Part shown: piece after piece, positions 4,740-42,055 of the stretch | How the letters are laid out: the number at the start of each line of letters is the position of its first letter | How positions within the stretch are numbered: position 1 is the stretch's first letter | DNA from: Macrostomum lignano | Lineage: Eukaryota | Assembly: GCA_002269645.1 (NCBI GenBank) | Contig: NIVC01001875.1 | Coordinates: 1 to 42,055, forward strand | Length of the DNA: 42,055 nt | Direction: 5' to 3' | Translations under genes and position numbers: made by a program | Notes under the pieces: model-generated | Told to the model about the DNA's origin: nothing | Seen by the model: the letters and a program-made list of their open reading frames with translations, nothing else | Database searches by the model: none

Positions 4740-6460
4740 TTGTTTGGCATGATACTTCTTTTTATGTTTGAAATGTTGGCTCTTTAGTGTTTGACATGGT
4801 GGCTCTTCTATGTTTGACATGGTGGATCTTCTATGTTTGACATGGTAGCTCTTTAATGTTTGACATGGTGGCTCTTTAATTTTTGACATGGTGGCTCTTT
4901 AATGTTTGACATGGTGGCTCTTTAATGTTTTATATGGTGTCTCTAAGCCTCTTCTACATGTATGTTTGACATGGTGGCTCTTTTCTGTTTGACATGATAG
5001 CTCTTTAATGTTTGACATGGTGGCTCTTCTATATTTGACATGGTAGCACTTTAATCTTTGAAATGGTGGCTCTTTAATTTTTGACATGGTGGCTCTTTAA
5101 TGTTTGACATGGTGGCTTTTTTATGTTTGACATGGTGGCTCTTTATTGTCTTACATAGTGGCTCTCATGTTTGACATATTGGCTCTTATGTTTGACATGG
5201 TGGCTCTTTTATGTTTGACATTGTGCCTCTTTAATGTTTGATATGGTGCTTCTTTTTTGTTTGAAATGGTGGCTTTTTAATGTTTAACATAGTGGCTCTA
5301 ATGTTTGACATGGAGTCACATATATGTTCAACATGGAGTCACATATATGTTCGACATGGTAGCGCTTTTTTATGTTTGACATGGTGTCTCTTTAATGTTT
5401 AACTTGGAGTCACGTATATGTTTGATATGGAGTCATATATATGTTTGACATGAAGTCACTTATATTTTCAACATGGACTCACATATATGTTTGACATGGA
5501 GTCACGTATATGTTTGACATGTAGTCTCATATATGTTTGATATGGTAATTCTTTTATGTTTGACATGGTGTCTCTTTAATGTGGGACATGGTGGCTCTTT
5601 AATGTTTGACACGGTGGCTTTTTAATATTTGAAATGGTGGCTCTTTTATGTTTGACATGGAGTCATGCATTTGTTTGACATAGTAGCTCTTTTATGTTTG
5701 ACATGGTGGCTCTTTAATTGTTTGACATGGAGTCATGTATATGTTTGACATGTAGTCACGTATAAATTTGACTTAGTGGTTCTTTTATGTTTGACATAGT
5801 GGTTCTTTTATGTTTGATATGGTTGCTCTTTAATGTTTGAAATGGTGTCACATATATGTTCAATATAGAGTCAAGTATATATTTGACATGGCGGCTCTTT
5901 TGTGTTTGACATGATAGCTCTTTAATGTTTGACATGGTGGCTCTTCTATGTTTGACATGGTAGCACTTTAATCTTCAACATGGTGGTTCTTTAATGTTTG
6001 ACATGGTGGCTCTTTAATGTTTGACATAGTGGCTCTTTTATGCTTGACATGGTGGCTCTTTATTGTCTTACATAGTGGCTTTCATGTTTGACATGTTGGC
6101 TTTTATATTTGACATGGTGGCTCTTTTATGTTTGAAATGGTGGCTCTTTTAGGTTTGACATAGTGGCTCTTTTATGTTTGACATAGTGGCTCTTTTATGT
6201 TTGACATAGTGGCTCTTTAATGTTTGACATAGAGTCACGTATATGTTCAACATGGAGTCACATATATGTTCGACATGGTAGCTATTTTATGTTTGACATG
6301 GTGTCTCTTTAATGTTTGGCATGATGGCTCTTTTAAGTTTGACATGGAAGCTCTTAATTGTTTGACATGATGGCTCTTTTATATTTGACATGGTGGGGCT
6401 TTTTTATGTTTGACATGGTGCTACTTTTATGTTTGACTTTGTGCTTCTTTTATGTTTAGC
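4740..6460. repeat. ~22-23-bp minisatellite (atgtttgacatggtggctcttta) with a gagtcacatat subtype
   Basis: Repeated tttgacatggtggctc core. A variant block is duplicated at ~917-bp offset. Confidence 0.95.
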
Positions 6461-25700: not shown

Positions 25701-28700
25701 CAATTAGTTAGCGAAAGCTTCCCGCCAGGTAAGCAACAGTTTACCCGGTTTGAATTTAACCTACCTGCTTACTTTCTGAAGTAATATTAACGTTAAACAG
25801 GTGTGAAAATTTAGATTAAAAATATTACCTATCATTTACTATCACTACTATCAGGGTAGTTTCTTAAAGTACGAGTATCAATAATTTATTTCAGCTGCAC
25901 AACTTCGGTAAAATGCTTTAGCTTCATACATACAGTGAATACAGTGAGGGACAGTGAATAACTGTTTTCGTTGTAACTATTCGACCTTCAAAGAGATACT
26001 CGAAAATTCTAAAAAAATGAAGATATATTTTCGTTTTTAGTCTGTTTATTTTCGTAGTTTCGTTCAATTTATTTTTTATAACATTGCATTAGACGCTAAT
26101 AATTTGCTTTACTTATAATGACTAAAAGAATATTTTTCGTTTTACTTAACTGTTTTATTATACATTTAGTAGCTGTAGTCTTTAACATGCTCAAACAAGC
26201 AATTGTTTGAAATTAAAAGAAATTTTCTTATATTCAACTGAATGAACCAGGGGCGTCGCCATGGATTTTATGGTGGGGGGATAAAGCCAAGAATTCAACA
26301 TGTTCATGAATAAATTCCTACACTAAATTTCCATTATTTTGAGAATCGTGCTGTCAGCGCTCATTTTTGCGTCAAGAGCGCTCTATTTTGGCACCCTAAC
26401 CCAGTGGCGACCCGCCTGGAATAAACAGTTATGAAATTAAATGTTCGCTTGGTCATTCGCACGTACATACTGTTAAAACAAAACACACGCATACGCTTGT
26501 AACACAACAATAAAGATGACGCGGAGCCGTTGTACGTGACAGTTGAGACTCTAGTTGTGCCGCAGCTGCCAGCAGCCAACGCTCAGGCCGTAAGCTTAAG
26601 ACCTGCACGCAAAGCAATGGGAAACAATTATCTGGGATAATTTCTTGTTATACTATACATAGTTACTGTTTTCTTTCGCTTTTTGGCATTCCGGGATTTT
26701 ATGGGTGAATGCGCCGTTCAATATTTGGTTTGCTGCATGAAAAAAACACCTTTAGAATAAACAGATTTAGATATCAACTCTCGTCTTATTGCTTTACGAA
26801 TCTTGCTTTTTGTTTTACTAATATCTAAGCGTACGAACTTTGCTCAGGAATTTTTTGTGGCATTATGCATATATGCATTATGCATTATACTATTGTCTAT
26901 CAAAAATCAGTAAAATATTATTAATGTATTAAGATCAGTTATACTCTATATACTGTTTCAAGTAAGTTATATAATTATGCATTGAATTATCTTGCTCGTT
27001 TGTTGTCAAAAAATATGTTTAATATTTTCTATATTCGGCTAAAATTACGCAGACTCCCATGAAAATCAAGGCGAAAATTCCATGGCCTCTCTGGCCTCAA
27101 CCGGTGACAATCAACTGGAAATGGACTTCACACAGAGTCTGCCAGTGCTAAATATGGTGCGCAGATTTGGAAACCAAAGACAGACTCGAAAAATCACATA
27201 GTTTTTTAAACAGTATAACAAATTCAACTAATTAAAACAAAAAATTACTACATCAAAAATACTGAAAAAACGTTATAAATTTTATGCTATTGACAATAAT
27301 TTTGTAGAAAGAGAGCGTTGCACACTGAACTTAAAAAGTAATTTAGAAAATATTAAAACGATAACATGAAAAATAGTATTCAAGAGTGCAGCGCCCTCTT
27401 TAATTTACTGGACTAATTCACAAATCGTCCTTAAAACCTGTTGATTGTACATACCATACCTGAAATTATTGCATGTACACGTATAATCTCATTTATTACA
27501 TCTAGATACTTTGGTTGCGGTTATAATTAACAGCTACACAGGTTATTACATGTGCGGCTATTTCTTTTTTCTAAAATGGTCAAAATCCAAGTTTTGTGGG
27601 AATGGTTTGTTCGAAATTTGCGTCGCTTATATTAATTATTGCCTACAGTGTATTTGATTTGATGATTGCTATGATTTGAATATTATATAGTTTGCACGAT
27701 AATACCGTGGCTACATGCCGACTTATTCCATACCCTGCAGTGAATTGGAGTGCCTGCTCACAATCATTAGGCAGACTCAATCTGTCGGTAAGACATGATT
27801 TAACCAAGCTCAGAGAAGGCCGACCAAACCCATTTTTAAATTGGACATTTACTTTCTTATTGTCACGATGTTTGTATTGAATACTATCAGAAGTTTCCTG
27901 ACCTTCTGTCACCCTTGTCAATCTTTATAAACTGTTGTCCTTCAGAGCTTATAGAGTCACCTAGGAGAGTTACAATGTTTGCTTGCTATGTACAATGTCT
28001 GCTCAGAAAAAATGCAAAACAAGTAATTATCCATGTAGTCACAAATGTGAACGTGTGCTGTCCTTGATCATAGAAGTACATTCATATGTATCGAAAGACA
28101 AAACGATCAGAATAAAAACACGTAGTTTTATTGCATACTTTTTCAGATTCCCGGCGAAGACGATGGTCGCGGTACAACAAAATCGAAAGGTGATTATTCT
28201 GTTGGTCAATTTGGTCATTTGGGATTTTGATAACTATCATTTCAAATCCTCAACCCTACGTAGGCAAGAAAGCGTCCCGATCTGGCAGTTTTGCCAGTCG
28301 GTTCCGCCGAGTGTTCCGTGGTCCCGACCGGAAGTCAACTGGAAAACAACAGCAACAACAGCAGCAGCAACAGCCGCAGCAACAACGTTCGCCAAGCATA
28401 GACCAGGTGTTCTCAGATGAAAGCTACTACGCCCAGCAGCCTGGTACTAGCGGCTACTCAATTCAGCCCTACAGCTACGGAGACGGTTATCAGCAGCAAC
28501 CGATTCAGGCGAATCCTCCTCCTACCGACGAATTCGGCAGCGGGCAGCGCAGAAATCGCAGTCTCAGCAGCAGCCTGCGTCGGCTCTTCACAGGCGGTGG
28601 CAAAAAGAAAAAGAGACAGCGAGCTGAATCAGGTAAGGTCATAGACATTTACAGATATTGCATCTGTGTCCAGCATAGCCGAGTGAGGCCATAGACATTT

Positions 28701-30091
28701 ACAGATATTGCAGCTGCGTCCAGCATAGCCGAGTGAGGCCATAGACATTTACAGATATTGCAGCTGTGTCCAGCATAGCCGAGTGAGGCCATAGACATTT
28801 ACAGATATTGCAGCTGCGTCCAGCTTAGCCGAGTGAGGCCATAGACATTTACAGATATTGCAGCTGTGTCCAGCATAGCCGAGTGAGGCCATAGACATTT
28901 ACAGATATTGCAGCTGCGTCCAGCTTAGCCGAGTGAGGTCATAGACATTTACAGATATTGCAGCTGTGTCCAGCATAGCCGAGTGAGGCCATAGACATTT
29001 ACAGATATTGCAGCTGCGTCCAGCTTAGCCGAGTGAGGCCATAGACATTTACAGATATTGCAGCTGTGTCCAGCATAGCCGAGTGAGGCCATAGACATTT
29101 ACAGATATTGCAGCTGTGTCCAGCATAGCCCGAGTGAGGCCATAGACATTTACAGATATTGCAGCTGTGTCCAGCATAGCCGAGTGAGGCCATAGACATT
29201 TGCAGATACTGCAGCTGTGTTCAGTCTATTCGAGTGAGGCCATAGACATTTGCAGATGTTTCAGCAGCTGTGTCCAGCCTAGTTGCTTAAGTTGGACAAA
29301 AATTTCTTTGTGACTTCGAATTCGTAGGACCTGTGCCAGTATTTGGATACCCAACTGGCCAAATTCCATTGATGAGACCAACAGGTAAATTGCTTGGCTA
29401 TTAAATCTGCAGATCTCGTATGATGCCATTCTGGGATCTTGCATGTATTGTTCAATTACGATTTTTTATACAAAATATCGTTTATGCACATTCTTTGCTA
29501 TAATCTGCATGTAAGCTTTTCATATTTAGCAAATGATGAAATGAATGAACTATAGCTCTCACCTTTTTGAGACATTATCGCCTTTACAAGCTAAAACATA
29601 TGCAATGCAGTATAACAAATGAGATCTGTTTACTCTGTTTCGAGTTAAATGCCCATGAATATGCTGTGTGTGCAAAAAACTCATTGAAAAAAACCATTCC
29701 CAGGTCAAAAAGACTTTTACGATCCCATTTAGATGCAACAGACCGCCACCTACCCCATTTATCTCAGGTCACACAGACCGACACCCACCCTATCCATCTC
29801 AGATCAAACAGACCGACATCAACCCCATCTCAGATCAAACAGACCGACACCCAACCCCATCTGAGATCAAACAGACCGCGAAACACACCCCATCTCAGAT
29901 CGAACAGACCGAGACCCAACCCCATCTCAGATCAAACAGACCGACATCAACCCCATCCGAGATGAACTTGCATGCACTTGTCTCACTTTGCAGAGACTCG
30001 ACAGCAGTATTCAAGTGGGCAGCAACAGCAACAGGCCGCATCAAGCAAGTCTGGTCGAGATGGCGGCTGGAATAGCGAGGAGATTCTGTAA
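10955..30091 (+). CDS. C2CD2L: C2CD2L/TMEM24-C2CD2 family ER-anchored SMP + C2 domain phospholipid transfer protein, ~991 aa, 12 exons
   Basis: Phase-consistent GT-AG exons: 10955-11428, 18096-18185, 20316-20414, 21228-21716, 23115-23386, 23759-24276, 24847-25068, 25531-25728, 27053-27156, 28147-28189, 28264-28632, 29994-30091. The protein has an N-terminal TM (LLFVGWCLFGILAVVIINFI), an SMP start (ESCCWLNTLVAWL..WLSALN, then SLVFEDIIVGDTPPEIVSV) and a C2 domain (LLIKLIKATGL..CVELDEPYQRHVT..PYWDQSYMLDLTPQSKRLSLHVFD..LLGSASI). It ends in a low-complexity basic tail. The 3' exons are less certain than the domain exons. Confidence 0.85.
11570..13547. repeat. 20-bp minisatellite (ggttcatcaagtttgattcc), ~100 copies, intron 1
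   Basis: Near-perfect 20-bp period. Confidence 0.97.
14470..14987. mobile_element. hAT-type MITE carrying an internal 21-bp tandem array (14585-14830)
   Basis: TIR caggggcgtcgcca / tggcgacgccccta. 8-bp TSD tggactac at 14462-14469 and 14988-14995. Confidence 0.85.
15040..15232. repeat. Degenerate ~190-bp interspersed repeat (probable MITE), copy 1; a second copy in opposite orientation lies at ~16133-16310
   Basis: gcatttagt...gagaacgcatagc...ttaatg.ggttt.gccatagacaa..cggt.gag matches the reverse complement of 16158-16228. Both loci start tcttagagatgag. Confidence 0.6.
15112..15154. mobile_element. 43-bp TIR mini-element with a 7-bp target duplication
   Basis: cagggaaacctctatg / catagaagcttccttg (13/16 inverted match), flanked by gcatagc on both sides. 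The paralogous repeat at ~16195-16205 has a single gcatagc and no insert. Confidence 0.7.
16685..16736. repeat. (GA)n microsatellite
   Basis: Pure GA run. Confidence 0.97.
17091..17170. repeat. 20-bp tandem repeat (tgtggtgtcttatatcctga), ~4 copies
   Basis: Direct inspection. Confidence 0.85.
17248..17740. repeat. 24-bp minisatellite (agtagcttccatcctgaggtggta) with 20-bp deletion variants
   Basis: The period gives the SGWKLLTT and MEATYHLR ORF artefacts. Confidence 0.95.
18358..20180. repeat. 16-bp minisatellite (gggtggttgagacact), >100 copies, intron 2
   Basis: Near-perfect 16-bp period. A ggacggttaag variant is confined to the 3' part. Confidence 0.97.
20923..21160. repeat. 33-bp tandem repeat with two alternating variants, centred on ggtacc
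   Basis: tcaagtagattgatgcggtaccgcattgattag alternates with tgaagtagatcgatttggtacctcatcgattag. Confidence 0.85.
22659..22875. repeat. Old, degenerate ~40-55-bp tandem repeat
   Basis: Five recurrences of a ggctctcaacgagtcc-like core. Confidence 0.6.
26248..26418. mobile_element. hAT-type MITE, short array-less copy of the 14470 family
   Basis: Starts caggggcgtcgccatggattttatggtggggg, identical to 14470, and ends tggcgacccgcctg. Flanks gaatgaac / gaataaac (7/8 TSD). Confidence 0.8.
28633..29270. repeat. 50-bp minisatellite starting at a splice donor, ~12 copies, alternating A/B units
   Basis: gagtgaggccatagacatttacagatattgcagctgtgtccagcatagcc recurs at 28681, 28731, 28781 and onward. Confidence 0.95.
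29720..29962. repeat. ~32-bp minisatellite (aaccccatctcagatcaaacagaccgacaccc)
   Basis: Period of 31-33 bp. Confidence 0.9.
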
Positions 30092-32425
30092 TGCCGACAG
30101 CGTTAATCTCGAACAAGTTTCGCGGGCGCCCTTTATTGTGACTCAGTTTTGAATTCGATGCTGTTTAAGCCGATTAATTATAAGTTCAAACAAACGCTAT
30201 TGATAGCTTAATTTAGACTGAAAGTTACTAACTGGCTTTTGATTAAATCGAATTCAAAGAACATCAAGAACGAAATTATAATGTCAATTGATTTTGCATT
30301 GCTCAGCCTGCATGCATGCTGTCATTCCTGACGCACTGACCACAGTTTGTAATTGTATGTAATCCCAGTTTTAAATTCTCATTTTTTCTACTTTGTGAAC
30401 CATTGTACTTTTAAAATTAAAGTGTGCAATATTTTAATAGTTTGTACAATAGAAAGTCCGTTGTGTATTTTTATTTACTTTGAATTTAGCCTCTGTTCGT
30501 AATTGTTTTCGATGTTTAGGATCGTATTATAGGACAGTTCAATGTTCAATGATTATTCCGTTCGTTTCGGTGAGTAAATGCAAATTTATCATTAGCTTAA
30601 TTTGCTGTTAATTACTGTTTATTCTTAATTGACAGTTGTTCAATCTTTTAGTCTCAGTCATAGACTTACTTCAAGTCCTGTTGGCATACTCAGATTTCAA
30701 AGTACGTAATTATTGCTGTTTTTCGAGTTTTTCGGTTCTTTCGTTTGAAAGAAAAACAAACCAGAGCCTTTTCTAAAATTTGTTTAAAGGACCACTGATA
30801 GCAAACGAAGCTAATGCATCCCTGAAAACTGATTCAAATTTAATTGAAACCCATTTTTTCGTGATAGGAATGTTTTACTTTATAATTAGCTCAAAAATTA
30901 AGTTGGTAAGTATTTCAACATATATTGTTGTTTCATTTTAGTAAAGTTTAATTTATTTTATTATACGAGCTCGTGCAATAATTGTTGTAAGTTAATTATT
31001 GTTTTTATTACAATTATTCTTCATTTTCAAAATGCATTAGCATTATCTACACTAGTTAAAAGGGCGATCACCACAGGCAACTTTCCAAACCGGAATAGTC
31101 AATAATAATTTCTTTAATAGCTATCTGAAATAATTATAGTAAAAATCTTGGATATAATTTGCGATTAGAGTTGCAGTTTTGTTGTAAATTTTTTTGCTGG
31201 TAAAAAGTCAATTTCGTGCTGAAAACGGAGAAATTCTTTTTTGATTTGCAATTTACTTGAGAGCAAAATCCGGCCTTCAAAGAATTGTATCAGTCTGGTG
31301 TTAACTATACGTCTCGTTTATTATCAGTGGTTCTATATTGTTTTTTGTTTCGATTTGTTTTAGCTAGCTAGAAATCGTTTTTACGATAGCTAGAATTCGT
31401 TTATTAGATCTTATGTTTCTCGATTCTCAACTTGCTATAATTTGGACAATTTTTTAATTATGACCTACTGACGTCAGCTACACACAGATCAAGCACATAT
31501 CAAGCATACATTGTGGTGTAGCTATATCATGATTCTTAAACTTGTATGACAAATTTTCATGACAAACTTAAAGTCTTGAGATCCACACGCAGTCTATCGA
31601 AGCGAGTTTTTGGAGTAGTATTTGTTGTTGGACGATCTTTGTCGTAAACTTTTTAGTAAACAAAAATACTTGCTTTGATGTTTAACGCCATGTCGCCAGG
31701 ACAAATAACTATACGTGCTTCCTGTGAATCGCAAGAAAGCATACTTGTGTAAATAGTTCCACGTTGATTTGCAAATTTATTCACGCGCACATTAAATATA
31801 CTACTGCCTTATTTTGGTCGGATAAGTAGGCCATGCAGGGCCTGTCTGAAATTATTTTCTATATTTTTCATTTATGTATTAATTTTTTAGCTAGCCAAAC
31901 GACTAATTTGCTAATAGATAAAGTTTAAAAATGTTGAAATCAAATTAATGTTTCCGATATTTGGATATTATTAATATAGCTATAATCAAATTTTGGGTTG
32001 AAAAACATGATTTGCTTCTAGAATTGGAACATCCGAAAACAATGTAATCACAACTAAAATTACAAGTAGCTCGTAGAATAGGAGACAAGAAATTCAGAGA
32101 AATGTTTTGGCTAAACAGCATTTCTGTTTGAATTGTTTTAAATAAATCCAATTTAAATTAACGCCAAACGTTGATCCATGTAAATGTCAAACACTTTTTT
32201 TTTCTCCATTAAAACAATGTTTGCAGATTTCATAGATCATTATAAAAGTGTTTATATGCGCTTAACCGTCCTTTAAAAATGTTTACCATTTGGCACGAAT
32301 TTGAATTCTGTAGACAAACGCCCGGCCATTTTTGTTAACGAAAAATGTGAAATTTTTACTCATTCATTGCCTTGCCAATAAAAACTTTCAGCCTTTGGCA
32401 TGCTGCACAAGCATCTAAAACTGAC

Positions 32426-33845
32426 ATGGACCTCCTTCTCACAGCCCTGCCAGCTCCATCTTATTCTTTGAAGCCGTCTCAGAATCCTGCGGAGCCTCAT
32501 CATCATCATCATAATCATCGTCAACGCAAATCGCAACGCCGTCGTCAGCGTCGACGCCAATCGGTGAGCATCGACAATTCTCGATTGATCGAATCGAATC
32601 GTCGGCAGCCTAACGATGCCTCTGCTAGACGTCTGTCAGATGCTGCTTGTGAAAGTCTGCATCAGCCAGTTCGTCTGCGGCAGCAACAGCAAAAGCAACA
32701 GCAGCAGCAATCAAACAATAAAGGTCGAACTGTGTACTATTCATTGCGACAAACTGAATCTCTGGTCGACTGCGGCGTCAACGTTCCCGGCGCTCCGCCA
32801 GCTACACCGTTGCCAATTGAAAATCCCGGATTAAAATACGTGCTCAGCATGCAGGACACGAAGGTGAAGATTTGGGATGGCGTATTTTATTGTTGGATTA
32901 TATCATCATTTAGATACACACAAGCTACATTTGTACGTCATTTTCTTAACTTATGCATAGTCAAACAAAGATTGTGCTTATTTTTTCGAGAAAATTTTGT
33001 TTTATGTCAAAACCAACACACCTGACATGTCGCATTCATAGCAGAATACTAGAGTAACTTGCACCGTTCGGCATTAAAGAATGTAGGTTAAAAAACTATT
33101 TTCACTTTTTGGATTGTAGGTAGCACAATAGAGTACCCTATCGAGTGTTTTAAATTAAACAAATCGATCAATCAATCAATCAATTATTATAGATTGATTA
33201 AGTAACCAATTCACAAAATTAATCTATAAATCAATCAATCGATCAGGCAACAATCAAACAACAAAATCAATTAATCGATCGATTAAACGATCAGTCAATT
33301 AATCAGCCAAAACAATCCATAAATCAAAAAACCAACCAATCAATCAACCAGTCGATAAAGTAATCGATAGATCAACTAATCAATCAATAAAATCAATTAA
33401 TCGATCGATCAAACCATCAATCAAGCAATCAAATAATCAATCAACAAACCAATCAATCAACTCCAGTCAAAACGCGAGCTGTCACTGAGACTAACGGAGA
33501 TTCGGGACAAGCGCAAGGACAATGCTATCCGGTCGGATTTGAAGGCTCAGCTAGAGGAAAGAGAACGAGAGCAAGCTCGACTCGCACAATTGCGAGTTGA
33601 GCAGAGAAATCGGGTAAATGCCCTTCATACTGTTTATAGTAGAGTTTAGCGAAAATTGCTGTCTAAATTTGCAAATGTTCTTGAAACACCATTCGAATTT
33701 AATTGATTAAACTGTCAGAAATCTAAGCTTTGGGAGTCATTCATGTAGCCTTTCCAAATTTCAGATATACGCGCTGAACAAACTGATGACTGAGTTGGAG
33801 CTGACCGATTTTAAAACATTTCGCGCATCGAAGGAAGCCAACTGA
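32426..33845 (+). CDS. SVBP: 221-aa protein with a C-terminal SVBP/CCDC23-like helix
   Basis: Exons 32426-32863, 33467-33613 and 33765-33845, all phase 0. The spliced end QRNR|IYALNKLMTELELTDFKTF aligns with human SVBP [23 protein letters not shown] (14/23 identities). The start ATG is inferred; an upstream acceptor lies at 32391. Confidence 0.75.
33165..33460. repeat. Degenerate (ATCA)n/(ATCG)n microsatellite-like tract in an intron
   Basis: Runs of aatcaatc and atcgatc. Confidence 0.8.
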
Positions 33846-35071: not shown

Positions 35072-36717
35072 CTATTTGTGCACGATGCAGTTCTTCAGCA
35101 GAGCCTGTCGTTGCTGCTTCTCCTTCCGGCGTCGTTCGCGACGCTGCTTTCGCTTGTTGCGCCGTCTCTTACGGCCACCACCTCGACGACGGCCTTTCCT
35201 TTTCTCGTCATCATTGTCGACAACCGGAGCGTCGCCTTGCATTTTATCTTTGCTGGCTGGTTGTGAGCTGAATTCGATCTGGAATTCGATTGAAGTGGTG
35301 CAGATTTGAGTCAGTTGGCGAGCGGCTACTGGTATGAGCTTAGGATCTAGGAGGTCAGGTGGTGACGCTGACGCAGCAACTGAGACTCTGGGAGGCTGGA
35401 CCAGCAACTGACACTCTGGGAGGCTGGCCCAGCAACTGACACTCTGAGAGGCTGGCCCAGCAACTGACACTCTGGGAGGCTGGACCAGCAACTGACACTC
35501 TGGGAGGCTGGACCAGCAACTGACACTCTGGGAGGCTGGACCAGCAACTGACACTCTGGGAGGCTGGCCCAGCAGCTAAGGATCTGAGAGGCTGACCCAG
35601 CAACCGAGAATCTGGGAGGCTGGCCCAGCAACTGAGGATCTGAGAGGCTGGCCCAGCAGCTGAGGATCTGGGAGGCTGGCCCAGCAACTGACACTCTGGG
35701 AGGCTGGACCAGCAACTGACACTCTGGGAGGCTGGACCAGCAACTGACACTCTGGGAGGCTGGCCCAGCAGCTGAGGATCTGAGAGGCTGGCCCAGCAAC
35801 CGAGAATCTGGGAGGCTGGCTCAGCAACTGAGGATCTGAGAGGTTGGCCCAGCAACTGACACTCTGGGAGGCTGGCCCAGCAACTGAGAATCTGAGAGGC
35901 TGGCCCAGCAGCTGAGGATCTGAGAGGCTGGCCCAGCAGCTGAGGATCTGGGAGGCTGGGAAGTTGAGGGGCTGGCGTTATAATCTCGTTATATCCGAGA
36001 CCGTTACTAATGTCCCCGCTATGAGAAACGAGCACAATTGAGCTACAAATGCTTACACCAAGGCTTTTTGCTTGCTGCAGAAACGACAGCATGCACTGCC
36101 GGATGCAATCGTGACAGTACTCCTAAAATATCCAATCGAAGAGTGAAGTTTGGTAATATTGCATATCAGGAACATCTTAGACTAGTTATAAATTTAAGTA
36201 CGCATTGGGTCTCGCACCATCATTACCTTCTTATCCGTGTAGATGTACACCAGGCGGTCGCATTTGGCTATGCATTCCCGACGACATTCCAGGAAAGCGC
36301 GAAGCTTATCTGCAATACAATTTTAAAAATATATTTTTAGGTGTGCTCAAATTACGAGCTGCATAATCGCAAATTTGCATCAATCAAGTAGAGAAAAGAT
36401 TTGTGATAAACGATATTGTGTTTTCCAGCTGAGTGGCAGATTGAATTATTCAATCAACAACAAACATCAAAAGCACACAATTAATTGAATGCTAAAAAAG
36501 TCTACCAACCGCTCTGGGAGATGCTGTCAGGCAGAAACTTCGCCACCACCGGCTCATGATGAATGCCCCGATGGTTGCCAGCTAGTGAAGTTGTCGGAGG
36601 CTGGTCAACTGCTGGCTTAGTTGAGTCGTACTTCGAGTCGGCATAGATTCCCATCGGTGAGACTGGCTCCAGCATTAATAAGCCACTCGCTAGCAAAAGT
36701 GTCAGAGTTAACAGCAT
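35072..36717 (-). CDS. Uncharacterised secreted ~187-aa protein: signal peptide, six-Cys module, Lys/Arg-rich tail
   Basis: Phase-consistent exons 36717-36510, 36309-36227, 36122-36057 and 35278-35072. Sequence: MLLTLTLLLASGLLMLEPVSP...DKLRAFLECRRECIAKCDRLVYIYTDKK|EYCHDCIRQCMLSFLQQAKSLG|...KRKGRRRGGGRKRRRNKRKQRRERRRKEK. The last-exon choice is less certain. Confidence 0.65.
35375..35960. repeat. 28-bp minisatellite (ctgggaggctggcccagcaactgacact), intronic
   Basis: The 28-bp period is not a multiple of 3, so it is not coding. Confidence 0.95.
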
Positions 36718-36884
36718 CCTTTGATGGAGCACAAGATCGTGGCAAAAGTTGCAAATTGCTTCGCTGTAGAAATGCGAGATTGTATAAATTTGCATATTTA
36801 TTTGATAAATCAGGACAGGAGTTGATTTCTAATTCCCCCATATAAGATTTTCTCAGGTAGCTAAAATTAATGATGGCTGAATCA

Positions 36885-37661
36885 TAGCTTTTTGCAGCCC
36901 TATTTGGGCTTACGCGCATTTAATTTAATCCAAGATATGTTTACCAGTGTAACAGAGCTTTTGTCTATGGTAGCGAGGCTGGCACAGCCCATTTAATTTG
37001 GTCCAGCAAGCATCAATTTGGTCCAAGTGCTCGTGAGCCATTCGGAAAATGCTTGCCTTTTCGCAACTGTCTGCAGGTTGTTGCGTACTGCTGGAATGTC
37101 AGCGGCTCTACCAACAATTTTCAGTTGCTTTTCCAGAGCTCTGCCGATAGTCGAAATCTGATAACCAACTGGAACTGTTCCTTCAACGTCTGCTGCATTT
37201 TCTGCACCGTCAACAAAGGGTTTCTCAATTACATCGAGTAGCAGTGGGGCCTGAGGCTCTTGAGCAACATGCCTTGGCGATTCCGCGATTGCCACCCTTT
37301 CGCAGGCGATCTCTGCCGCCAATGGTTTCAACGCGCTGATTGATGCTGTAAACCATATTTTTTTTATATTCAACAGCCTTACAATGTCCTTTGAGTGTTC
37401 ACCTCTGTCGAGTGCTTCGATCACAAGCCAATGGTTCGACAGCCTAGCATATGGTCCACAATTTGGGGGCTGATCTTGCTCCTCCTCCGCAGCAGTTGCA
37501 AATAAAGCTATGGACCAAATTGATGCTTGTTGGACCAAATTAAATGCCGCTGTGCCAGCCTTGCTACCATAGACAAAATTAGCTCCGTTACATTAAGCTC
37601 GTGGCAAACGTATCTTGGATAAATTCAATGCGCGTGAGCCCAAATAGGCTGCAAAAAGCTA
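36885..37661 (-). mobile_element. Decayed Tc1/mariner-like non-autonomous element with ~140-150-bp TIRs and a transposase N-terminal remnant
   Basis: 36885-37025 is the reverse complement of ~37511-37661, with TA at both outer ends. Internal VIEALDRGEHSKDIVRLLNI followed, after a frameshift in the A-run, by MVYSINQRVETIGGRDRLRKG resembles a Tc1-like paired HTH. Confidence 0.65.
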
Positions 37662-39620
37662 CATTAACTGTCAAAATTTGATGGATTTCTTTACCTAAAC
37701 ATTAAAGAGAGAGAGAGAGAGAGAGAAGAGAGGTCACGGCGTGTTAAATTATTTCATTGAAAGTAGGCTACCGGTTTCAAGCCTCTGGGCTCTTTGAGTA
37801 AAAAGGTAAAAAGGTTTGAGTAAAAAAACATTCATATTAATCCCCAGGACGAAAACATTTCAGGCATGGGCAGAAAGGTACTTACACAGCCACAGATCTG
37901 AAGATAGTAGTTAGTTGACAGCACTGAGAGACAATCAATTGACTACGTTGTAAACCGATATACAGGTTGAAAAAGAACCAAAAATGGGCACCTATATATG
38001 GAAAATATGGCAACCAATGATGGCTTAGCTATGCATACAGTATTAGTTGATATTCATCTCGTCATTGGCTGCACAAGTCGGATAGGGACACAGGACAGAA
38101 CTATTGCTCTGCAAAGAATAGAAAACAAATTAGACATGTGAGAATCCGATAAAAATTGGATAACACAGTCGCAGGAAACTTTCTCACCCACAGATGAAGA
38201 ATAAGAAGAGCATATGCCGAGCAGTGTCTGCTCAGTTTGAGCACTTGAACAATGCCCCATTGCCTAGCAAACTGACTACCTCAACACCGCGCTTTGACAG
38301 ACTCTACGCTCCTATAAAGTTGTCAGTCAGAGCGTGGGAGAGAATGAGGGGGGTCACAAGGGTTTATAGAGAGGCGGGGGTATTCTCTTTACCTTTACTA
38401 TGCACCTACCTGAGAGTTTTGCTGTCGTTTTGTCCACTACTTACTCGTTGCATTACATATGCCTGGGTATTCTTTTAATCTAATCTATAGCCATGGCGTG
38501 TATGGAGGTTGCACAGGTTCAATGGGATGACACTGCTAGCACTACTAATTAATACAGTGGAGAGAAAGTGTCAGGCGTGGCAACGCCTATGAACGGGTGC
38601 CATAGTTTATAGACTGGTTTTAGCTATTTCATTTATGTATAGCTAGAGCTAAATTTAGATTTGAAAAAACTTGGTCTACGCTTTTAATGAGCAGCAAATG
38701 GGTTTGCTTGAGTTGTTGAATGAGTGAGAAGAGATCCTTTTGTGAGAAGTTTAACTAACTATACAGTGTGTCATCTACACAGGTATAATGGGTGTGAAAC
38801 GCTTGCAAATTGAATTACGAGTAAATAGGCTTCCAAACTGTAATACCGACACATTTCGTTTGCTAATTTTCACAAACTAATCTATCTTCATAAAGTATGA
38901 ACTACAACAAAAATTCTTACTTTATCTTCTTTCATTAACGTGAAGGAAGCGAAGTGAGTAAAGAAAATTTTTTAGAATAACTAATCATTCTAGCACGCAC
39001 GTAACGTACACGTTAACAAGAAACGGCACATATAAACAAACAAATATTGTTATCAATCAACATTAAATATATACGCATAATAACTTTGTTAATATAACTC
39101 AAGTCGGCCACAGAATATCAACGTAAAATAAACAACTAGCCGCCTATCAATTAGACTCAGAGTAAACTGGCAGATATTCTCGCTTGTTTGAGAACAGATA
39201 AAGCTTCGAACTGCGTAGTTTACTTTCCATAATAGTTGCTACGCCCATATAATTAAATAAGTTTACGCTCATATTCTAAACTGTTGGTAATTTATTGAGC
39301 GACCACATCCTAACTATTCAAATCATAAAAAACTTTATAAAACTCGTTCAGCGTATCTAAAAAACTGAGTCATAGTTATGAGTCATAATTAAATTTAAAA
39401 AGTCGCATTCTTTTGATAATATAAAATTTACAGATGTTGTCTTTCAACATCGCCAACATACTTTATGGTTAATAAGTATGAATAAAATGTAGTTTTCTCA
39501 TTATTTATTTGATCAACAAAAGCAACACGTAAATAACATTGAAGCCTCATTCTCGTATTGTTTAGTGTTTTTGAGTCAACAATTAGACAATAATAAATAG
39601 AATATCGGCCCGAGGATGAG

Positions 39621-42055
39621 TTAGCTGGCGCTACTAAGCGCCATAGTCTCCCTAATCCAGCTAATGTAGCCGGTAATCCGCATGAAATTAGCCGGATAAA
39701 GCTCCGGATTAGCTCCAGTGGCCGCGGAGGAAGCTATGCCAGCCAGATAGGGTTGACCGTTGTGCTCACACCTGAGACCGCCGCCGCTGTCTCCCTGAAA
39801 AGACAATTGATTTGAGAAAATAAACATTTTAGTGTTGAAAGACCGATTCTGCACACAATTATAATAATGTCTTAGTCTTCTAGAATAGGTTTGTTGTTAG
39901 CTTTTTTCACTCTTCTGTGATATTCTACACGCTTCTACATCCTACATCTTTGCTATTTTGTTATACCCATCTGTTCTTTGTTATACCCTTCTGTTGTTTG
40001 CTATGCCCTTCTGTTGTTTGCTATACACTTCTGTTGTTTGCTATGCCCTTCTGTTGTTTGCTATACCCTTCTGTTGTTTGCTATACCCTTCTTTTGTTTG
40101 CTATACCCTTCTGTTGTTTGCTATGCCCTTCTGTTGTTTGCTATACACTTCTGTTGTTTGCTTTACCCTTCTGTTCTTTGCTATACCCTTCTGTTGTTTG
40201 TTATACCCTTCTGTTGTTTGCTATGCCCTTCTGTTGTTTGCTATACACTTCTGTTGTTTGCTTTACCCTTCTGTTGTTTGCTATACCCTTCTGTTGTTTG
40301 CTATACCCTTCTTTTGTTTGCTTTACCCTTCTGTTGTTTGTTATACCCTTCTGTTGTTTGTTATACCCTTCTGTTGTTTGTTATACCCTTCTGTTCTTTG
40401 CTATGCCCTTCTGTTGTTTACTATACACTTCTGTTGTTTGCTATACCCTTCTGTTGTTTGCTATGCCCTTCTGTTGTTTGCTATACACTTCTGTTGTTTG
40501 CTATACACTTCTGTTGTTTGTTATACCCTTCTGTTGTTTGTTATACCCTTCTGTTGTTTGCTATGCCCTTCTGTTGTTTGCTATGCCCTTCTGTTGTTTG
40601 CTATACACTTCTGTTGTTTGCTATACCCTTCTGTTGTTTGCTATGCCCTTCTATTGTTTGCTATACCCTTCTTTTGTTTGCTTTACCCTTCTGTTGTTTG
40701 TTATACCCTTCTGTTGTTTGTTATACCCTTCTGTTGTTTGTTATGCCCTTCTGTTCTTTGCTATGCCCTTCTGTTGTTTACTATACACTTCTGTTGTTTG
40801 CTATACCCTTCTGTTGTTTGTTATGCCCTTCTGTTGTTTGCTATACACTTCTGTTGTTTGTTATACCCTTCTGTTGTTTGTTATACCCTTCTGTTGTTTG
40901 TTATACCCTTCTGTTGTTTGTTATACCCTTCTGTTGTTTGCTATGTCCTTCTGTTGTTTGCTATACACTTCTGTTGTTTGCTATACCCTTCTGTTGTTTG
41001 CTATACCCTTCTGTTGTTTGCTATACTCTGCTGTTGTGTGCTATACCCTTCTGTTGTTTGCTATACTCTGCTGTTGTTTGCTATACTCTGCTGTTGTGTG
41101 CTATACCCTTCTGTTGTTTGCTATACTCTGCTGTTGTTTGCTATACTCTGCTGTTGTGTGCTATACCCTTCGATTCCTGGCTGTGTCATCGACTCGCGCA
41201 TCAAAGCGTGGATCAGGACCCAGCACCGCTCGACTTGGGCGAACTGCACTACCTGCAGGCAATCCAGAGGCGCTGTCCCTCAGCCCTCTCACCAGCTCCG
41301 GAAGCTCCTCTTGCGCCTCTCGCGCAGAGACATCCGGGCTGCCACCATGACCCTCTCTGGTCACGGCTGCTTCTCCAGGCACCAGTACCTGCAGGGCAAC
41401 GCCACCAACGCCACCTGTAGTTTCTGCAACTCAGGTGACGAAACCGCTGAGCATTTCGTCAGCATCTGTCCCGCCTTCACGCGGGCCAGACTCACTTACC
41501 TCGGGCCACACACATCTATTACTGAAGCGTGCAAACCCGAAAACTTTAATCAGCTCATGCGCTACCTTCGGGCCACCCGCAGGGCTGAACTCTCCTTTCC
41601 AGAGAGCACTATAGCTGCTGGCGACACTGGGGGACCTCCCTGGGCGGCGCCAACCCTCCGTCCATAGCGACGCGTCGGCCGTTCAGGGACTAGCGGAATG
41701 GGCGCCCGCGCCTTCCCGCTGTGTCCCCTCCGGGACAGCCCTGCAGCTAAGTCAAGTAAGTCAAAGCTATACCCTTCTGTTGTTTGCTACATCCTATGGT
41801 TTTTAAATACTCCACAAGGAGTCCACAAATAAATAAGTCCACAAGGAGTCGCTTCCATATTGCTATAGCTTCTTCTCACCGGACACACTGTCGTCCTATT
41901 GGCCTGAACGCACAAATTCTTTTGCCAAAGCGCCGAATCTCCTCCCTGAAAGACGCTGGTGCAATCGCCCAACGTTTAACAGTGAACTGCGCCATCAGTA
42001 GTTTCTCTCGAACGCTGCCCTTCGGACGAGTGCAGCCCCAGCCAGAGTAGTCACA
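39621..42055 (-). CDS. Trypsin-like (S1A) serine protease, last two exons (partial; 1-nt frameshift near 41975)
   Basis: Exon >42055-41880 reads CDYSGWGCT...LLMAQFTVK / LGDCTSVF...NLCVQANRTTVCP. It splices (gtgag...ttttcag, phase 0) to 39794-39621, GDSGGGLRCEHNGQPYLAGIASS..PANFMRITGYISWI*. The catalytic GDSGG motif is intact. Confidence 0.9.
39940..41171. repeat. 20-bp minisatellite (ctatacccttctgttgtttg) in the protease intron
   Basis: 20-bp period, stop-free on the + strand, which produces the 477, 569 and 480-aa pseudo-ORFs. Confidence 0.97.
41172..41765 (+). mobile_element. 5'-truncated non-LTR retrotransposon (LINE, probably I/R1/Loa group): ORF2 C-terminus and 3' end
   Basis: LSGHGCFSRHQYLQG..TCSFCNSGDETAEHFVSICPAF is the CX2C..H..C knuckle of LINE ORF2, with a stop at 41667. 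Short-repeat tail taagtcaagtaagtcaa. gctatacccttc lies on both sides (41160-41171, 41766-41777). Confidence 0.85.

What the first reader, a model, noticed from the sequence alone, without database searches (positions are those of the whole stretch)
32426..33845. A long invertebrate protein ending in the SVBP vasohibin-activating helix
Seen: the motif appears only after splicing (QRNR|IYALNKLMTELE..F..F) and is invisible in the ORF track. Known: vertebrate SVBP is a 66-aa chaperone/activator of the VASH1/2 tubulin detyrosinases and binds through this helix. Here it is preceded by a coiled coil and ~145 aa of disordered, Arg-rich sequence (HHHHHNHRQRKSQRRRQRRRQ). Inference: an extended, possibly ancestral VASH cofactor whose basic N-terminus could bind microtubules or target the enzyme, for example in cilia.
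Basis: partly seen in the sequence, partly recalled or inferred. Interest (0 to 1): 0.75.

Follow-up and report, generated by a model that had tools for sequence, protein, structure and literature searches.

The report
Flatworm long-form SVBP gene
This is the flatworm Macrostomum lignano's copy of SVBP, the helper protein of the tubulin-trimming enzyme vasohibin, in a long form that turns out to be the normal, ancestral form in animals and carries a second conserved motif, held at a fixed distance by a charged helix, that I found in no Pfam family or searchable paper.

Summary
Three GT-AG exons (32426-32863, 33467-33613, 33765-33845, + strand) give a 221-aa protein. From the first Met on it is identical to GenBank PAA63073.1, a Macrostomum lignano "hypothetical protein". 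Its last 46 residues match Pfam PF15674 (SVBP/CCDC23) above the curated cut-off and align to human SVBP chains in the PDB.

A profile search of 1.84 billion proteins shows the long form is the rule outside vertebrates. Sixty-three proteins of 153-606 aa, from a choanoflagellate, sponges, cnidarians, a nemertean, molluscs, annelids and a crinoid, end in the same ~125-aa module:
- a small beta motif (KVYLSxxQS…P[CG]APPxTPxP…YEYVPSxxDIRSQR), which no Pfam model matched;
- a charged helix of exactly 47 residues in 55 of 60 sequences;
- the SVBP helix IYALNKxMTELE..F..F.

At 221 aa the flatworm protein sits at the short end. Only residues 1-95 are lineage-specific low complexity, but a dense basic cluster recurs in about half of the long forms.

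Best reading: an ancestral-type vasohibin cofactor. The motif/ruler function and microtubule tethering are inferred. I could not verify a vasohibin gene in M. lignano. The family assignment already exists in databases. The extended module is a new variant.

The parts
32386..32391 (+). TTTCAG, the probable spliced-leader trans-splice acceptor (or 5'UTR exon acceptor) that marks the 5' end of the mature mRNA
   Evidence: The annotated 5'-partial CDS starts at 32393, the first in-frame codon after the AG at 32390-91. The sequence matches the M. lignano trans-acceptor motif [T/C]TNCAG (PMC8629364). The annotation pipeline cuts transcripts at SL sites (PMC5730564). Inferred; no reads were inspected.
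32392..32425 (+). 5' UTR (34 nt), open in the CDS frame. It holds an out-of-frame upstream ATG at 32400. The SL's own terminal AUG would open a 9-codon uORF ending at TAA 32416-32418.
   Evidence: Read directly. SL sequence from PMC8629364. 100% and 96% identical in the two other genomic copies.
32426..32863 (+). Coding exon 1, aa 1-146: start codon in a G..ATGG context, the low-complexity basic N-terminus, and most of the conserved beta motif
   Evidence: Donor AAG|gtgaag. The same intron position (after ..D-I-R/D-T-K) is seen in exon fragments from other animals that end '...DIR|VS'.
32498..32560 (+). His5 plus the Arg-rich cluster HHHHHNHRQRKSQRRRQRRRQ (aa 25-45)
   Evidence: It has 9 K/R and 6 His in 20 aa, and is more clustered than shuffles of the N-terminus (p about 0.05). 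Comparable K/R clusters occur in 32 of 62 long-form homologues. No sequence homology outside M. lignano.
32723..32863 (+). Conserved N-motif, exon-1 part (aa 100-146): TVYYSLRQT...G..VPGAPPATPLP......YVLSMQDTK
   Evidence: Invariant or near-invariant S106, P121, A123, P124, P125, T127, P128, D144 across 31 sequences. Family consensus. AF2 predicts strands 101-104, 113-115, 118-120, 136-139 at pLDDT 75-87, and the same pattern in the annelid homologue. Among the three genomic copies there are 4-7 synonymous and 0 nonsynonymous differences.
32864..33466 (+). Intron 1 (603 nt, phase 0), containing a degenerate (AATC)n array at 33217-33460
   Evidence: It shows 28-47 gap columns between genomic copies, against none in the exons.
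33467..33613 (+). Coding exon 2, aa 147-195: end of the N-motif (SKR149) and the charged helical spacer up to ...VEQRNR
   Evidence: The R149-to-I196 distance is 47 residues in 55 of 60 family members, with a median E+R+K+Q content of 57% (50% here) and no heptad register.
33614..33764 (+). Intron 2 (151 nt, phase 0), immediately before IYALN
   Evidence: The same position is used in the second M. lignano paralogue and in siboglinid annelid fragments ending 'QRxQ|V'. A vertebrate-type (teleost-like by sequence) read-through hit reads '...QRQRAE|STCRV'.
33765..33845 (+). Coding exon 3, aa 196-221 plus TGA: the SVBP vasohibin-binding helix IYALNKLMTELELTDFKTFRASKEAN
   Evidence: The Pfam PF15674 match covers aa 175-220, i.e. 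window 33551-33613 plus 33765-33839. It aligns to human SVBP residues 39-57 in PDB chains. It is invariant among the three genomic copies. pLDDT about 97.

Best explanation
The locus is an expressed, three-exon, probably SL-trans-spliced gene. It encodes the Macrostomum lignano orthologue of the ancestral long form of small vasohibin-binding protein (SVBP).

Shown:
- The C-terminal 26-30 residues are a bona fide SVBP helix.
- Upstream of it lies a module shared with homologues from a choanoflagellate, sponges, cnidarians, spiralians and an echinoderm: a ~50-aa beta motif carrying an invariant P-x-A-P-P-x-T-P core and a Y-V-x-S-x-x-D segment, then a charged helix whose length is fixed at 47 residues although its sequence varies.
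- In front of the module is a lineage-specific, net-basic, low-complexity N-terminus.

Inferred mechanism:
- As in the human VASH-SVBP complexes, the amphipathic C-terminal helix (I196, Y197, L199, L202, M203, L206, F211, F214) inserts into the N-terminal helical groove of vasohibin. This stabilises and activates the enzyme as an alpha-tubulin detyrosinase.
- The contiguous ER/K-like helix acts as a rigid spacer of about 7 nm. It holds the beta motif at a set distance from the enzyme, where the motif docks on a second site. That site could be vasohibin, the neighbouring tubulin, or a regulator. The invariant PxTP is a candidate proline-directed phospho-site.
- The His/Arg cluster gives electrostatic tethering to the acidic microtubule surface, the role played in vertebrates by the basic disordered tails of VASH1/2. 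Alternatively it serves as a localisation signal.

Vertebrate 66-aa SVBP is then a truncated derivative that kept only the helix.
For: Gene model and expression:
- The model is identical to the transcript-derived annotation.
- The 5' end coincides with a consensus trans-splice acceptor.
- Three genomic copies are 97-98% identical with intact ORFs. There are no exon indels but 28-47 gap columns in intron 1. pN/pS is 0.06-0.31.

Family membership:
- PF15674 scores above the gathering threshold.
- Human SVBP PDB chains are hit.
- The intron before IYALN is conserved.

Ancestral long form:
- The 129-position profile gives 213 hits at E <= 1e-3.
- 63 proteins of 153-606 aa match both the N-motif and the helix, with the module within 10 residues of the C-terminus in 56 of 63.
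- Named members: Salpingoeca, Oscarella, Ephydatia, Hydractinia, Clytia, Paramuricea, Lineus, Mytilus, Mizuhopecten, Haliotis, Littorina, Ridgeia, Lamellibrachia, Antedon.

Module anatomy:
- Consensus and invariant columns.
- The spacer is 47 aa in 55 of 60 sequences, E/R/K/Q-rich, with no heptad register.
- AF2 predicts four short strands plus one 79-80-residue helix at pLDDT 97-99 in both the flatworm and the annelid protein.
- No Pfam model matched the N-motif.

Basic N-terminus:
- Clusters of at least 10 K/R in 20 aa occur in 32 of 62 long forms. The clustering exceeds shuffles in 36 of 62. Median K+R is 16% against D+E 8%.

Precedents:
- Basic disordered VASH tails set microtubule residence time (PMC9750192).
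- Disrupting the Chlamydomonas locus chosen for its match to the human SVBP peptide (VashL) depletes axonemal detyrosination (PMC11770126).
- Vasohibin is present in schistosomes and a planarian (PMC2194728).
Against: - No vasohibin gene of M. lignano was identified. The search listed only the best 120 of 821 hits, all vertebrate. No paper or supplement I could read mentions one.
- No complex could be modelled.
- The ruler, docking and microtubule-tether functions rest on conservation patterns and analogy only.
- AF2 gives high confidence to long isolated helices whether they are single helices or coiled coils.
- The beta motif has only moderate confidence (pLDDT 75-87) and no structural match in the PDB.
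- The pN/pS figures rest on 13-15 substitutions per pair among copies that are not independent.
- Family lengths come from automatic gene models, some of them fragments, and organism names are known for only about 20 members.
- The 5'UTR holds an out-of-frame upstream ATG (32400), so translation efficiency of the main ORF is unknown.
Confidence: 0.7

Rival explanations
1. The protein has a largely vasohibin-independent role. The arginine-rich cluster would be a nuclear or nucleolar localisation signal or an RNA-binding arginine-rich motif. The conserved beta motif and long helix would serve another partner, and the SVBP-like helix would be a generic amphipathic interaction helix.
For: - RQRKSQRRRQRRRQ is compositionally like arginine-rich NLS/NoLS motifs (my own knowledge).
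- M. lignano vasohibin is unverified.
- The N-motif has no known function and no Pfam model matched it.
- M. lignano has a second SVBP-helix paralogue group that lacks the N-motif (P0014/P0015). That group could be the canonical cofactor.
Against: - The helix keeps every hydrophobic position of human SVBP residues 39-57 and is invariant among copies.
- The motif and helix are always linked at a fixed distance in lineages that keep the family.
- No named member comes from nematodes or hexapods, the groups reported to lack vasohibin. Only about 20 members are named, so this is weak (PMC4866520).
Confidence: 0.13
2. The long helix (aa 142-220) is a dimeric or oligomeric coiled coil rather than a single-helix ruler. 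The long form would then be a scaffold that brings two vasohibin molecules together, or bundles the enzyme with another coiled-coil protein.
For: - AF2 predicts one uninterrupted 79-80-residue helix with very high confidence in two species. This is also typical of coiled-coil segments.
- A human VASH1-SVBP heterotetramer has been crystallised (PMC7543661).
- Pfam itself names the family 'coiled-coil domain-containing protein 23'.
Against: - No heptad register: the best of 7 registers puts a hydrophobic residue at only 8 of 23 a/d positions.
- The spacer is 50-57% E/R/K/Q, the signature of ER/K single alpha-helices.
- In the solved complexes the SVBP helix is buried in vasohibin as a monomer (PDB hits; my own knowledge of those structures).
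Confidence: 0.12
3. The long ORF is a gene-model artefact: an unrelated upstream exon or UTR fused to a short SVBP gene, or a decaying duplicate. The real product would be a short, vertebrate-like SVBP or nothing.
For: - The GenBank protein is flagged 'partial', and the ORF is open upstream of the first Met.
- The N-terminal 95 aa are low complexity with no homologue outside the species.
- The genome is highly duplicated and repeat-rich.
Against: - Exon 1 also encodes the conserved N-motif, which in more than 60 other proteins sits at the same fixed distance from the helix.
- Intron 1 is at the position conserved in other phyla.
- Exons 2-3 have no in-frame ATG before Met203.
- The annotation is built from RNA-seq and a de novo transcriptome.
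- Three copies keep the whole ORF, with no exon indels and pN/pS below 0.35.
Confidence: 0.04

Closest known systems
Vertebrate SVBP / CCDC23 (human Q8N300, 66 aa; Pfam PF15674; PDB 6J4O, 6J4V, 6OCF, 6NVQ and others)
   Same: - The C-terminal helix IYALN-x-x-MTELE-x3-F-x2-F, with all hydrophobic positions kept.
- The Pfam match is above threshold.
- An intron lies immediately before IYALN.
- Presumed role: chaperone and activator of vasohibin tubulin detyrosinases.
   Different: - 221 aa against 66 aa.
- It carries an extra conserved beta motif (aa ~100-152), a 47-residue charged helical spacer and a basic low-complexity N-terminus. Hits I judged vertebrate-type by sequence match only profile positions ~70-127.
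- Binding to vasohibin has not been tested for this protein.
Long-form SVBP homologues of non-vertebrate Holozoa, e.g. Ridgeia piscesae KAK2192820.1 (153 aa), Mizuhopecten yessoensis XP_021374610.1 (563 aa), Antedon mediterranea XP_071944382.1 (441 aa), Oscarella lobularis XP_065842703.1 (266 aa), Salpingoeca rosetta PTSG_07106 (597 aa). All are uncharacterised; some are auto-named 'Small vasohibin-binding protein' in UniProt.
   Same: - The same C-terminal ~125-aa module in the same order and spacing.
- The same two intron positions where they can be seen.
- The same predicted fold in Ridgeia.
- A basic cluster in the N-terminal extension in about half of them.
   Different: - The M. lignano protein is near the short end of the range.
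- Its motif is more diverged (Y-Y-S-L-R-Q-T for Y-L-S-E-K-Q-S; D-T-K-S-K-R for D-I-R-S-Q-R).
- Its basic tract is Arg/His/Gln-based rather than Lys/Ser-based.
Chlamydomonas reinhardtii VashL (Cre05.g241751), reported in PMC11770126
   Same: A non-vertebrate locus chosen for its correspondence to the human SVBP peptide. Its disruption depletes axonemal tubulin detyrosination. This is functional precedent for an SVBP-helix gene outside vertebrates acting in cilia.
   Different: I did not retrieve or align its sequence, so its length and relation to the module are untested here. Unidentified GC-rich, multi-repeat SVBP-helix proteins in the search (P0111, P0125, P0135) lack the N-motif and repeat the helix 3 times.
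ER/K single alpha-helix (SAH) spacers, e.g. in myosin VI/X and caldesmon (my own knowledge; functional analogy only)
   Same: A long, highly charged E/R/K/Q-rich helix without a heptad register, with conserved length but variable sequence, placed between two functional elements.
   Different: No homology is claimed. Monomeric state and rigidity are untested. The M. lignano spacer is only 50% E/R/K/Q.
[quoted passage not shown]
   Same: Net-basic, disordered segments attached to the detyrosinase complex. In vertebrates they control microtubule residence time electrostatically. This is the proposed role of the His/Arg cluster.
   Different: They sit on the enzyme, not on the cofactor. No sequence similarity. 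The function here is inferred only.

Membership tests
SVBP / CCDC23 (Pfam PF15674) | Match to the family HMM at or above the curated gathering score (27 bits) | tested here: met
   30.3 bits (full protein) and 33.8 bits (last 75 aa); aa 175-220 match profile positions 15-60 of 63.
SVBP / CCDC23 (Pfam PF15674) | Amphipathic helix motif I-Y-A-L-N-x-x-M-T-E-L-E-x3-F-x2-F, alignable to the vasohibin-bound helix of solved human SVBP | tested here: met
   phmmer hits 13 SVBP chain sequences, best E = 1.3e-4. The alignment 'riyalnklmteleltdfktf' versus '[20 protein letters not shown]' keeps I, Y, L, M, L, F, F. I196, Y197, N200, E207 and F211 are invariant in 31 family members.
SVBP / CCDC23 (Pfam PF15674) | Phase-0 intron immediately before the IYALN codons | tested here: met
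   Seen in the window, in M. lignano paralogue 2, in annelid fragments and in a vertebrate-type read-through hit. It is a supporting feature rather than a formally defining one.
SVBP / CCDC23 (Pfam PF15674) | Small size (about 66 aa, essentially one helix), as in the characterised vertebrate proteins | tested here: not met
   221 aa. The survey shows small size is a trait of the vertebrate-type hits and not of the family, so it does not argue against membership.
SVBP / CCDC23 (Pfam PF15674) | Physical binding to vasohibin and enhancement of its tubulin detyrosinase activity | not testable with these tools
This needs co-expression and pull-down experiments.
SVBP / CCDC23 (Pfam PF15674) | Co-occurrence with a vasohibin (PF14822) gene in the same genome | tested here: inconclusive
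   The search with the verified human VASH1 core returned 821 hits but listed only the best 120, all vertebrate. There is none in the window or the fetched loci. Vasohibin is reported in Schistosoma and a planarian (PMC2194728).
Long-form (ancestral-type) SVBP, a class defined here | N-motif K-V-Y-L-S-x-x-Q-S ... P-[CG]-A-P-P-x-T-P ... Y-V-x-S-x-x-D-x-x-x-x-R upstream of the helix | tested here: met
   Window aa 102-149 carry V103, Y104, S106, Q109, G117, P121, A123, P124, P125, T127, P128, Y138, V139, S141, D144, R149. The full-profile match of the near-identical copy P0001 has E = 7.8e-55.
Long-form (ancestral-type) SVBP, a class defined here | Spacer of 47 residues between the motif's terminal Arg and the Ile of IYALN, with the module at the extreme C-terminus | tested here: met
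   R149 to I196 is 47 residues, as in 55 of 60 members. The window protein has 7 residues after F214, and the module ends within 10 aa of the C-terminus in 56 of 63 members.
ER/K single alpha-helix (SAH) domain | Long helix rich in E, R and K, lacking a heptad hydrophobic seam, monomeric in solution | tested here: inconclusive
   E+R+K+Q is 50% here (family median 57%). The best heptad register scores 8 of 23. AF2 predicts a continuous helix at pLDDT about 97. Monomeric state is not testable in silico here.

The most novel reading that the evidence does not exclude
Ancestral SVBP is not a mere chaperone helix but a three-part adaptor. A fixed-length (47-residue, about 7 nm) single alpha-helix works as a molecular ruler. 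It places a conserved, possibly phospho-regulated beta motif (invariant PxAPPxTP) roughly one tubulin-dimer repeat away from the vasohibin active site. A basic tail clamps the complex to the lattice. Together these would give the pre-vertebrate detyrosinase lattice register, processivity or cell-cycle/ciliary regulation. Vertebrates would later have lost these functions from SVBP and rebuilt them in the disordered tails of VASH1/2.
Probability: 0.15. Interest if true: 0.7.

Novelty: new variant of a known kind. Interest (0 to 1): 0.5.

Why it matters
All mechanistic work on SVBP that I know of uses the 66-aa vertebrate protein, where it is treated as a small chaperone or activator helix. The survey here indicates that this is a truncated derivative. 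From choanoflagellates to echinoderms, the cofactor carries a second conserved motif at a strictly conserved distance, plus a basic tail.

If that extra module contacts vasohibin, tubulin or a kinase, it is an unstudied layer of control of tubulin detyrosination. It would also explain why vertebrate VASH enzymes acquired their own basic tails.

M. lignano has transgenesis (PMC5730564). It is also, from my own knowledge, transparent, RNAi-amenable and has a ciliated epidermis. The gene in this window is therefore a practical entry point for testing this.

At the level of this single locus the result is modest. It is a correctly spliced, already annotated (as 'hypothetical') orthologue of a known family.

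Tried and rejected
1. Finding M. lignano vasohibin. I recalled the human VASH1 core and verified it as 100% identical to PDB 6OCF_A. The one remaining homology search listed only the best 120 of 821 hits, all vertebrate. tblastn of VASH1 against the window and four fetched loci found nothing, as expected. No paper holds both 'Macrostomum' and 'vasohibin'. Supplements of four M. lignano papers contain no VASH, SVBP or Mlig017488 entries.
2. Pseudo-multimer prediction. The construct was window aa 95-221, a (GGGGS)8 linker and the human VASH1 core, with a block-diagonal alignment. The first MAFFT run misaligned the SVBP rows onto VASH.
3. The apparent similarity of the N-motif to VASH1 'PSVPTFQPSTPVPERLEAVQRYIREL' that the misalignment suggested. 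An N-motif HMM against 120 VASH sequences gives at best 9.9 bits. This is chance and was rejected.
4. Foldseek of the AF2 model against the PDB: no match at E <= 0.001.
5. Rfam scan of the whole window: nothing.
6. Homology of paralogue group 2 (P0014) to the N-motif: BLASTP aligns only the C-terminal 34 residues, so that paralogue lacks a recognisable motif.
7. One literature search with min_terms=2 returned only generic flatworm papers and was uninformative.
8. Classical coiled coil for aa 142-195: rejected for lack of a heptad register.
Full report
**1. What is in the sequence**

The window is a eukaryotic contig with 40.8% G+C. In the flagged interval, three exons with canonical GT-AG borders join into a 666-nt ORF of 221 codons: 32426-32863, 33467-33613 and 33765-33845 on the + strand. 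Both introns are phase 0. No single ORF in the six-frame list contains the motif.

A homology search identifies the source. The model is identical from its first Met to PAA63073.1 (BOX15_Mlig017488g2, 'hypothetical protein, partial'), a 232-aa Macrostomum lignano protein. That protein lies on a contig of 42,055 bp, the length of this window. Two further genomic copies exist, PAA51688.1 and PAA81195.1.

**2. Is the gene model real?**

The M. lignano annotation was built from RNA-seq, a de novo transcriptome and mapped spliced-leader and poly(A) reads, not ab initio (PMC5730564).

- The annotated CDS is 5'-open and starts at 32393. This is the first in-frame codon after the AG of a TTTCAG at 32386-32391.
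- TTTCAG fits the published trans-splice acceptor motif [T/C]TNCAG (PMC8629364).
- The mRNA therefore very probably begins at 32392 behind the 35-nt spliced leader. The leader's terminal AUG is out of frame and would open a 9-codon uORF ending at 32418. A second out-of-frame ATG lies at 32400.
- The first in-frame Met, at 32426, has a G at -3 and a G at +4.
- Exons 2 and 3 contain no in-frame ATG before Met203. A short, vertebrate-like product cannot arise from them.

I fetched the two other copies and aligned them with the window.

- Exons have no indels, while intron 1 has 28-47 gap columns.
- Nei-Gojobori pN/pS is 0.27, 0.31 and 0.06 for the three pairs.
- Residues 100-152 carry 4-7 synonymous and no nonsynonymous differences.
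- The C-terminal helix (193-221) is invariant.
- The spacer (153-192) has 1-4 nonsynonymous changes but no length change.

The counts are small and the copies are not independent. Even so, the pattern matches the between-phylum conservation described in section 4.

**3. Is it SVBP?**

Pfam PF15674 (CCDC23, i.e. SVBP) matches aa 175-220 at 30.3 bits, E = 4e-7, against a curated cut-off of 27. The last 75 residues alone give 33.8 bits. phmmer against all PDB chain sequences returns 13 SVBP chain sequences from vasohibin-SVBP entries, best E = 1.3e-4. The one non-SVBP hit (8ppr_G, Spc25) has E = 3.5. The alignment pairs RIYALNKLMTELELTDFKTF with human [20 protein letters not shown]. All hydrophobic positions are kept.

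**4. The length survey and what it revealed**

The first search found, besides the M. lignano copies, only a 153-aa protein of the tube worm Ridgeia piscesae. That protein also has an N-terminal extension. It shares with the flatworm protein a second block upstream of the helix: V[YF][YW]S..QT......G...PGAPPxTPxP......YVxSMxD....R.L.

A profile search then added Lamellibrachia, several exon fragments, and a second M. lignano paralogue group, Mlig024393 (175/193 aa).

I built a 129-position profile covering both blocks and ran it against 1.84 billion cluster representatives. It gave 213 hits at E <= 1e-3, 59 at <= 1e-10 and 23 at <= 1e-30. I reclassified the best 150, plus hits from the earlier searches, offline:

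- 63 proteins of 153-606 aa (median about 400) match both blocks. The module ends within 10 residues of the C-terminus in 56 of them.
- 60 match only the helix. By sequence, most of these are vertebrate-type SVBPs of 54-140 aa.
- 25 match only the N-block. These are exon fragments ending '...DIR|VS'. They reveal an intron at the same place as M. lignano intron 1.

Names were available for about 20 full-module proteins:

| Group | Species (length, aa) |
|---|---|
| Choanoflagellate | Salpingoeca rosetta (597) |
| Sponges | Oscarella lobularis (266), Ephydatia muelleri (253) |
| Cnidarians | Hydractinia (339), Clytia (398), Paramuricea (310/329) |
| Nemertean | Lineus longissimus (571) |
| Molluscs | Mytilus (466), Mizuhopecten (563), Haliotis (280/425), Littorina (268) |
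| Annelids | Ridgeia, Lamellibrachia |
| Crinoid | Antedon mediterranea (441) |

The ctenophore Mnemiopsis (239 aa) shows a partial match.

So the long form predates animals, and the 66-aa vertebrate protein is the derived state. At 221 aa the M. lignano protein is among the shortest long forms. UniProt already auto-names several of these proteins 'Small vasohibin-binding protein', so family assignment exists at database level. Pfam, however, matches only the last ~55-60 residues of them and has no model matching the upstream block. In six full-text searches I found no paper describing the long form.

**5. Anatomy of the conserved module**

The consensus of 60 sequences is:

KVYLSEKQSG.....G...PCAPP.TPT.......EYVPSL.DIRSQR..K..L...E ...(charged)... 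QR.EIYALNK.MTELE...F..F

- In a 31-sequence alignment S106, P124, P125, P128, R149, L155, Q192, R193, I196, Y197, N200, E207 and F211 (window numbering) are invariant. P121, A123, T127, D144, Q148, A198, L199 and M203 are at least 90% conserved.
- The distance from R149 to I196 is exactly 47 residues in 55 of 60 sequences, although the intervening sequence is poorly conserved.
- That stretch is 57% E+R+K+Q (median; 50% in the window protein). It has no heptad hydrophobic seam: the best register scores 8 of 23.
- AlphaFold2 with this alignment predicts four short strands (101-104, 113-115, 118-120, 136-139; pLDDT 75-87) and a single helix 142-220 (pLDDT about 97). Residues 1-95 have pLDDT 55-82, with no alignment support.
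- An independent prediction for the annelid protein gives the same succession: strands 32-35, 44-46, 49-51, 67-70 and a helix 73-152 at pLDDT 97-99.
- Foldseek finds no PDB counterpart.

Of the '145 disordered residues', the last ~45 are a conserved folded motif.

**6. The basic N-terminus**

The tract HHHHHNHRQRKSQRRRQRRRQ (aa 25-45) has no sequence homologue outside M. lignano. As a compositional feature, however, it recurs:

- 32 of 62 long forms have a window of at least 10 K/R in 20 residues in their extension, and 12 have at least 12.
- The clustering exceeds composition-preserving shuffles (p <= 0.05) in 36 of 62.
- The extensions are net basic, with median K+R of 16% against D+E of 8%.
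- The S. rosetta protein even has a His-run followed by Arg/Lys.

Its function is not shown: microtubule tether, NLS/NoLS or other.

**7. Mechanism proposed**

By homology, the C-terminal helix binds the N-terminal helical groove of vasohibin and stabilises and activates the tubulin tyrosine carboxypeptidase, as in the human complexes.

Three further steps are inferred.

- The 47-residue helix is about 7 nm long as an alpha-helix. It acts as a spacer of selected length, positioning the beta motif at a defined distance from the enzyme. The conserved length with free sequence, and the absence of indels even among recent M. lignano copies, argue for a geometric constraint.
- The invariant P-x-T-P inside P[CG]APPxTP fits the minimal proline-directed kinase consensus (my own knowledge) and could be a regulatory site.
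- The basic tail may tether the complex electrostatically to the acidic microtubule surface. This is the role shown for the basic disordered tails of VASH1/2 (PMC9750192).

There is precedent for an SVBP-helix gene outside vertebrates acting on ciliary microtubules. Disrupting Chlamydomonas VashL, a locus chosen for its match to the human SVBP peptide, depletes axonemal detyrosination (PMC11770126).

**8. What remains open**

I could not show that M. lignano has a vasohibin. The last homology search listed only vertebrate hits, and literature and supplement searches were empty. Vasohibin is reported in Schistosoma mansoni, S. japonicum and a planarian (PMC2194728). It is reported absent from nematodes and hexapods (PMC4866520).

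A complex prediction was not possible.

M. lignano also has a second, older SVBP paralogue group (Mlig024393).

- It lies in the same gene neighbourhood: a C2-domain gene upstream and a minus-strand gene downstream.
- It keeps the intron before IYALN.
- It has no recognisable N-motif.

Which paralogue serves which function is unknown.

**9. Verdict**

- Right about family membership and about the long form being ancestral.
- Imprecise about the architecture.
- Untested about microtubule binding and cilia.

The locus itself is an ordinary, already annotated orthologue. The family-level finding is a variant of SVBP that I found described in no searched paper and matched by no Pfam model: a holozoan-wide module of beta motif, fixed-length charged helix and SVBP helix. 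It is worth an experimental look.

Noticed in passing
window 1-1067, 4260-4690, 4760-6457, 11566-13545, 14586-14834, 17249-17741, 18360-20180, 28636-29282, 29761-29957, 35367-35959, 39957-41171: The contig is studded with long minisatellite arrays of unrelated units, with periods of 16-50 bp and up to 114 copies (about 2 kb) each. Together they cover roughly a quarter of the 42 kb. Several produce spurious long ORFs in all frames.
   Followed up: partly
window 35072-37983 (- strand), array at 35367-35959: The annotated downstream minus-strand gene (235-aa product, no Pfam hit) overlaps a 28-bp x 21 tandem array. The array is open in all three minus-strand frames and encodes Cys/Trp/Pro/Ser-rich repeats. 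The ORF ends in a highly basic tail (KRKGRRRGGGRKRRRNKRKQRRERRRKEKQQ).
   Followed up: partly
window 33217-33460 (intron 1 of the SVBP gene): A degenerate (AATC)n microsatellite of about 61 units (64% matches) fills much of the intron. Intron 1 is also where nearly all the indels between the three genomic copies lie.
   Followed up: partly
window up to ~30091 (+ strand); L001 1-3019; L002 1-1153; L004 1-4646: A multi-exon C2-domain gene (917 aa here, 707 aa at the paralogous locus) lies upstream of the SVBP gene at all four M. lignano loci examined, with a minus-strand gene downstream. The two SVBP paralogue groups therefore stem from a segmental or whole-genome duplication that kept gene order.
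   Followed up: partly
L004 6001-7728 (M. lignano NIVC01000873.1), proteins P0014/P0015: The second SVBP-helix paralogue group (Mlig024393, 175/193 aa) passes PF15674 at 29 bits. It has two coding exons, with the intron again right before IYALN. It has a different Pro/Gln/Ser-rich N-terminus without the conserved beta motif or charged spacer.
   Followed up: partly
library proteins P0111 (437 aa), P0125 (772 aa), P0135 (763 aa), P0143, P0144, P0156: GC-rich, Ala/Pro-rich proteins from unidentified organisms (possibly algae or other protists) carry two or three tandemly repeated SVBP-like helices (R-A-Q-[IV]-Y-A-[LVI]-N-[KR]-L-[ML]...F..F). This architecture may relate to the Chlamydomonas VashL locus reported in PMC11770126.
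   Followed up: no
window 32392-32425: The short 5'UTR contains an out-of-frame ATG at 32400, which opens a 24-codon uORF (23-aa peptide) overlapping the main start. If the mRNA is SL-trans-spliced, the leader's own AUG would open a 9-codon uORF ending at 32418. Both may modulate translation of the main ORF.
   Followed up: no
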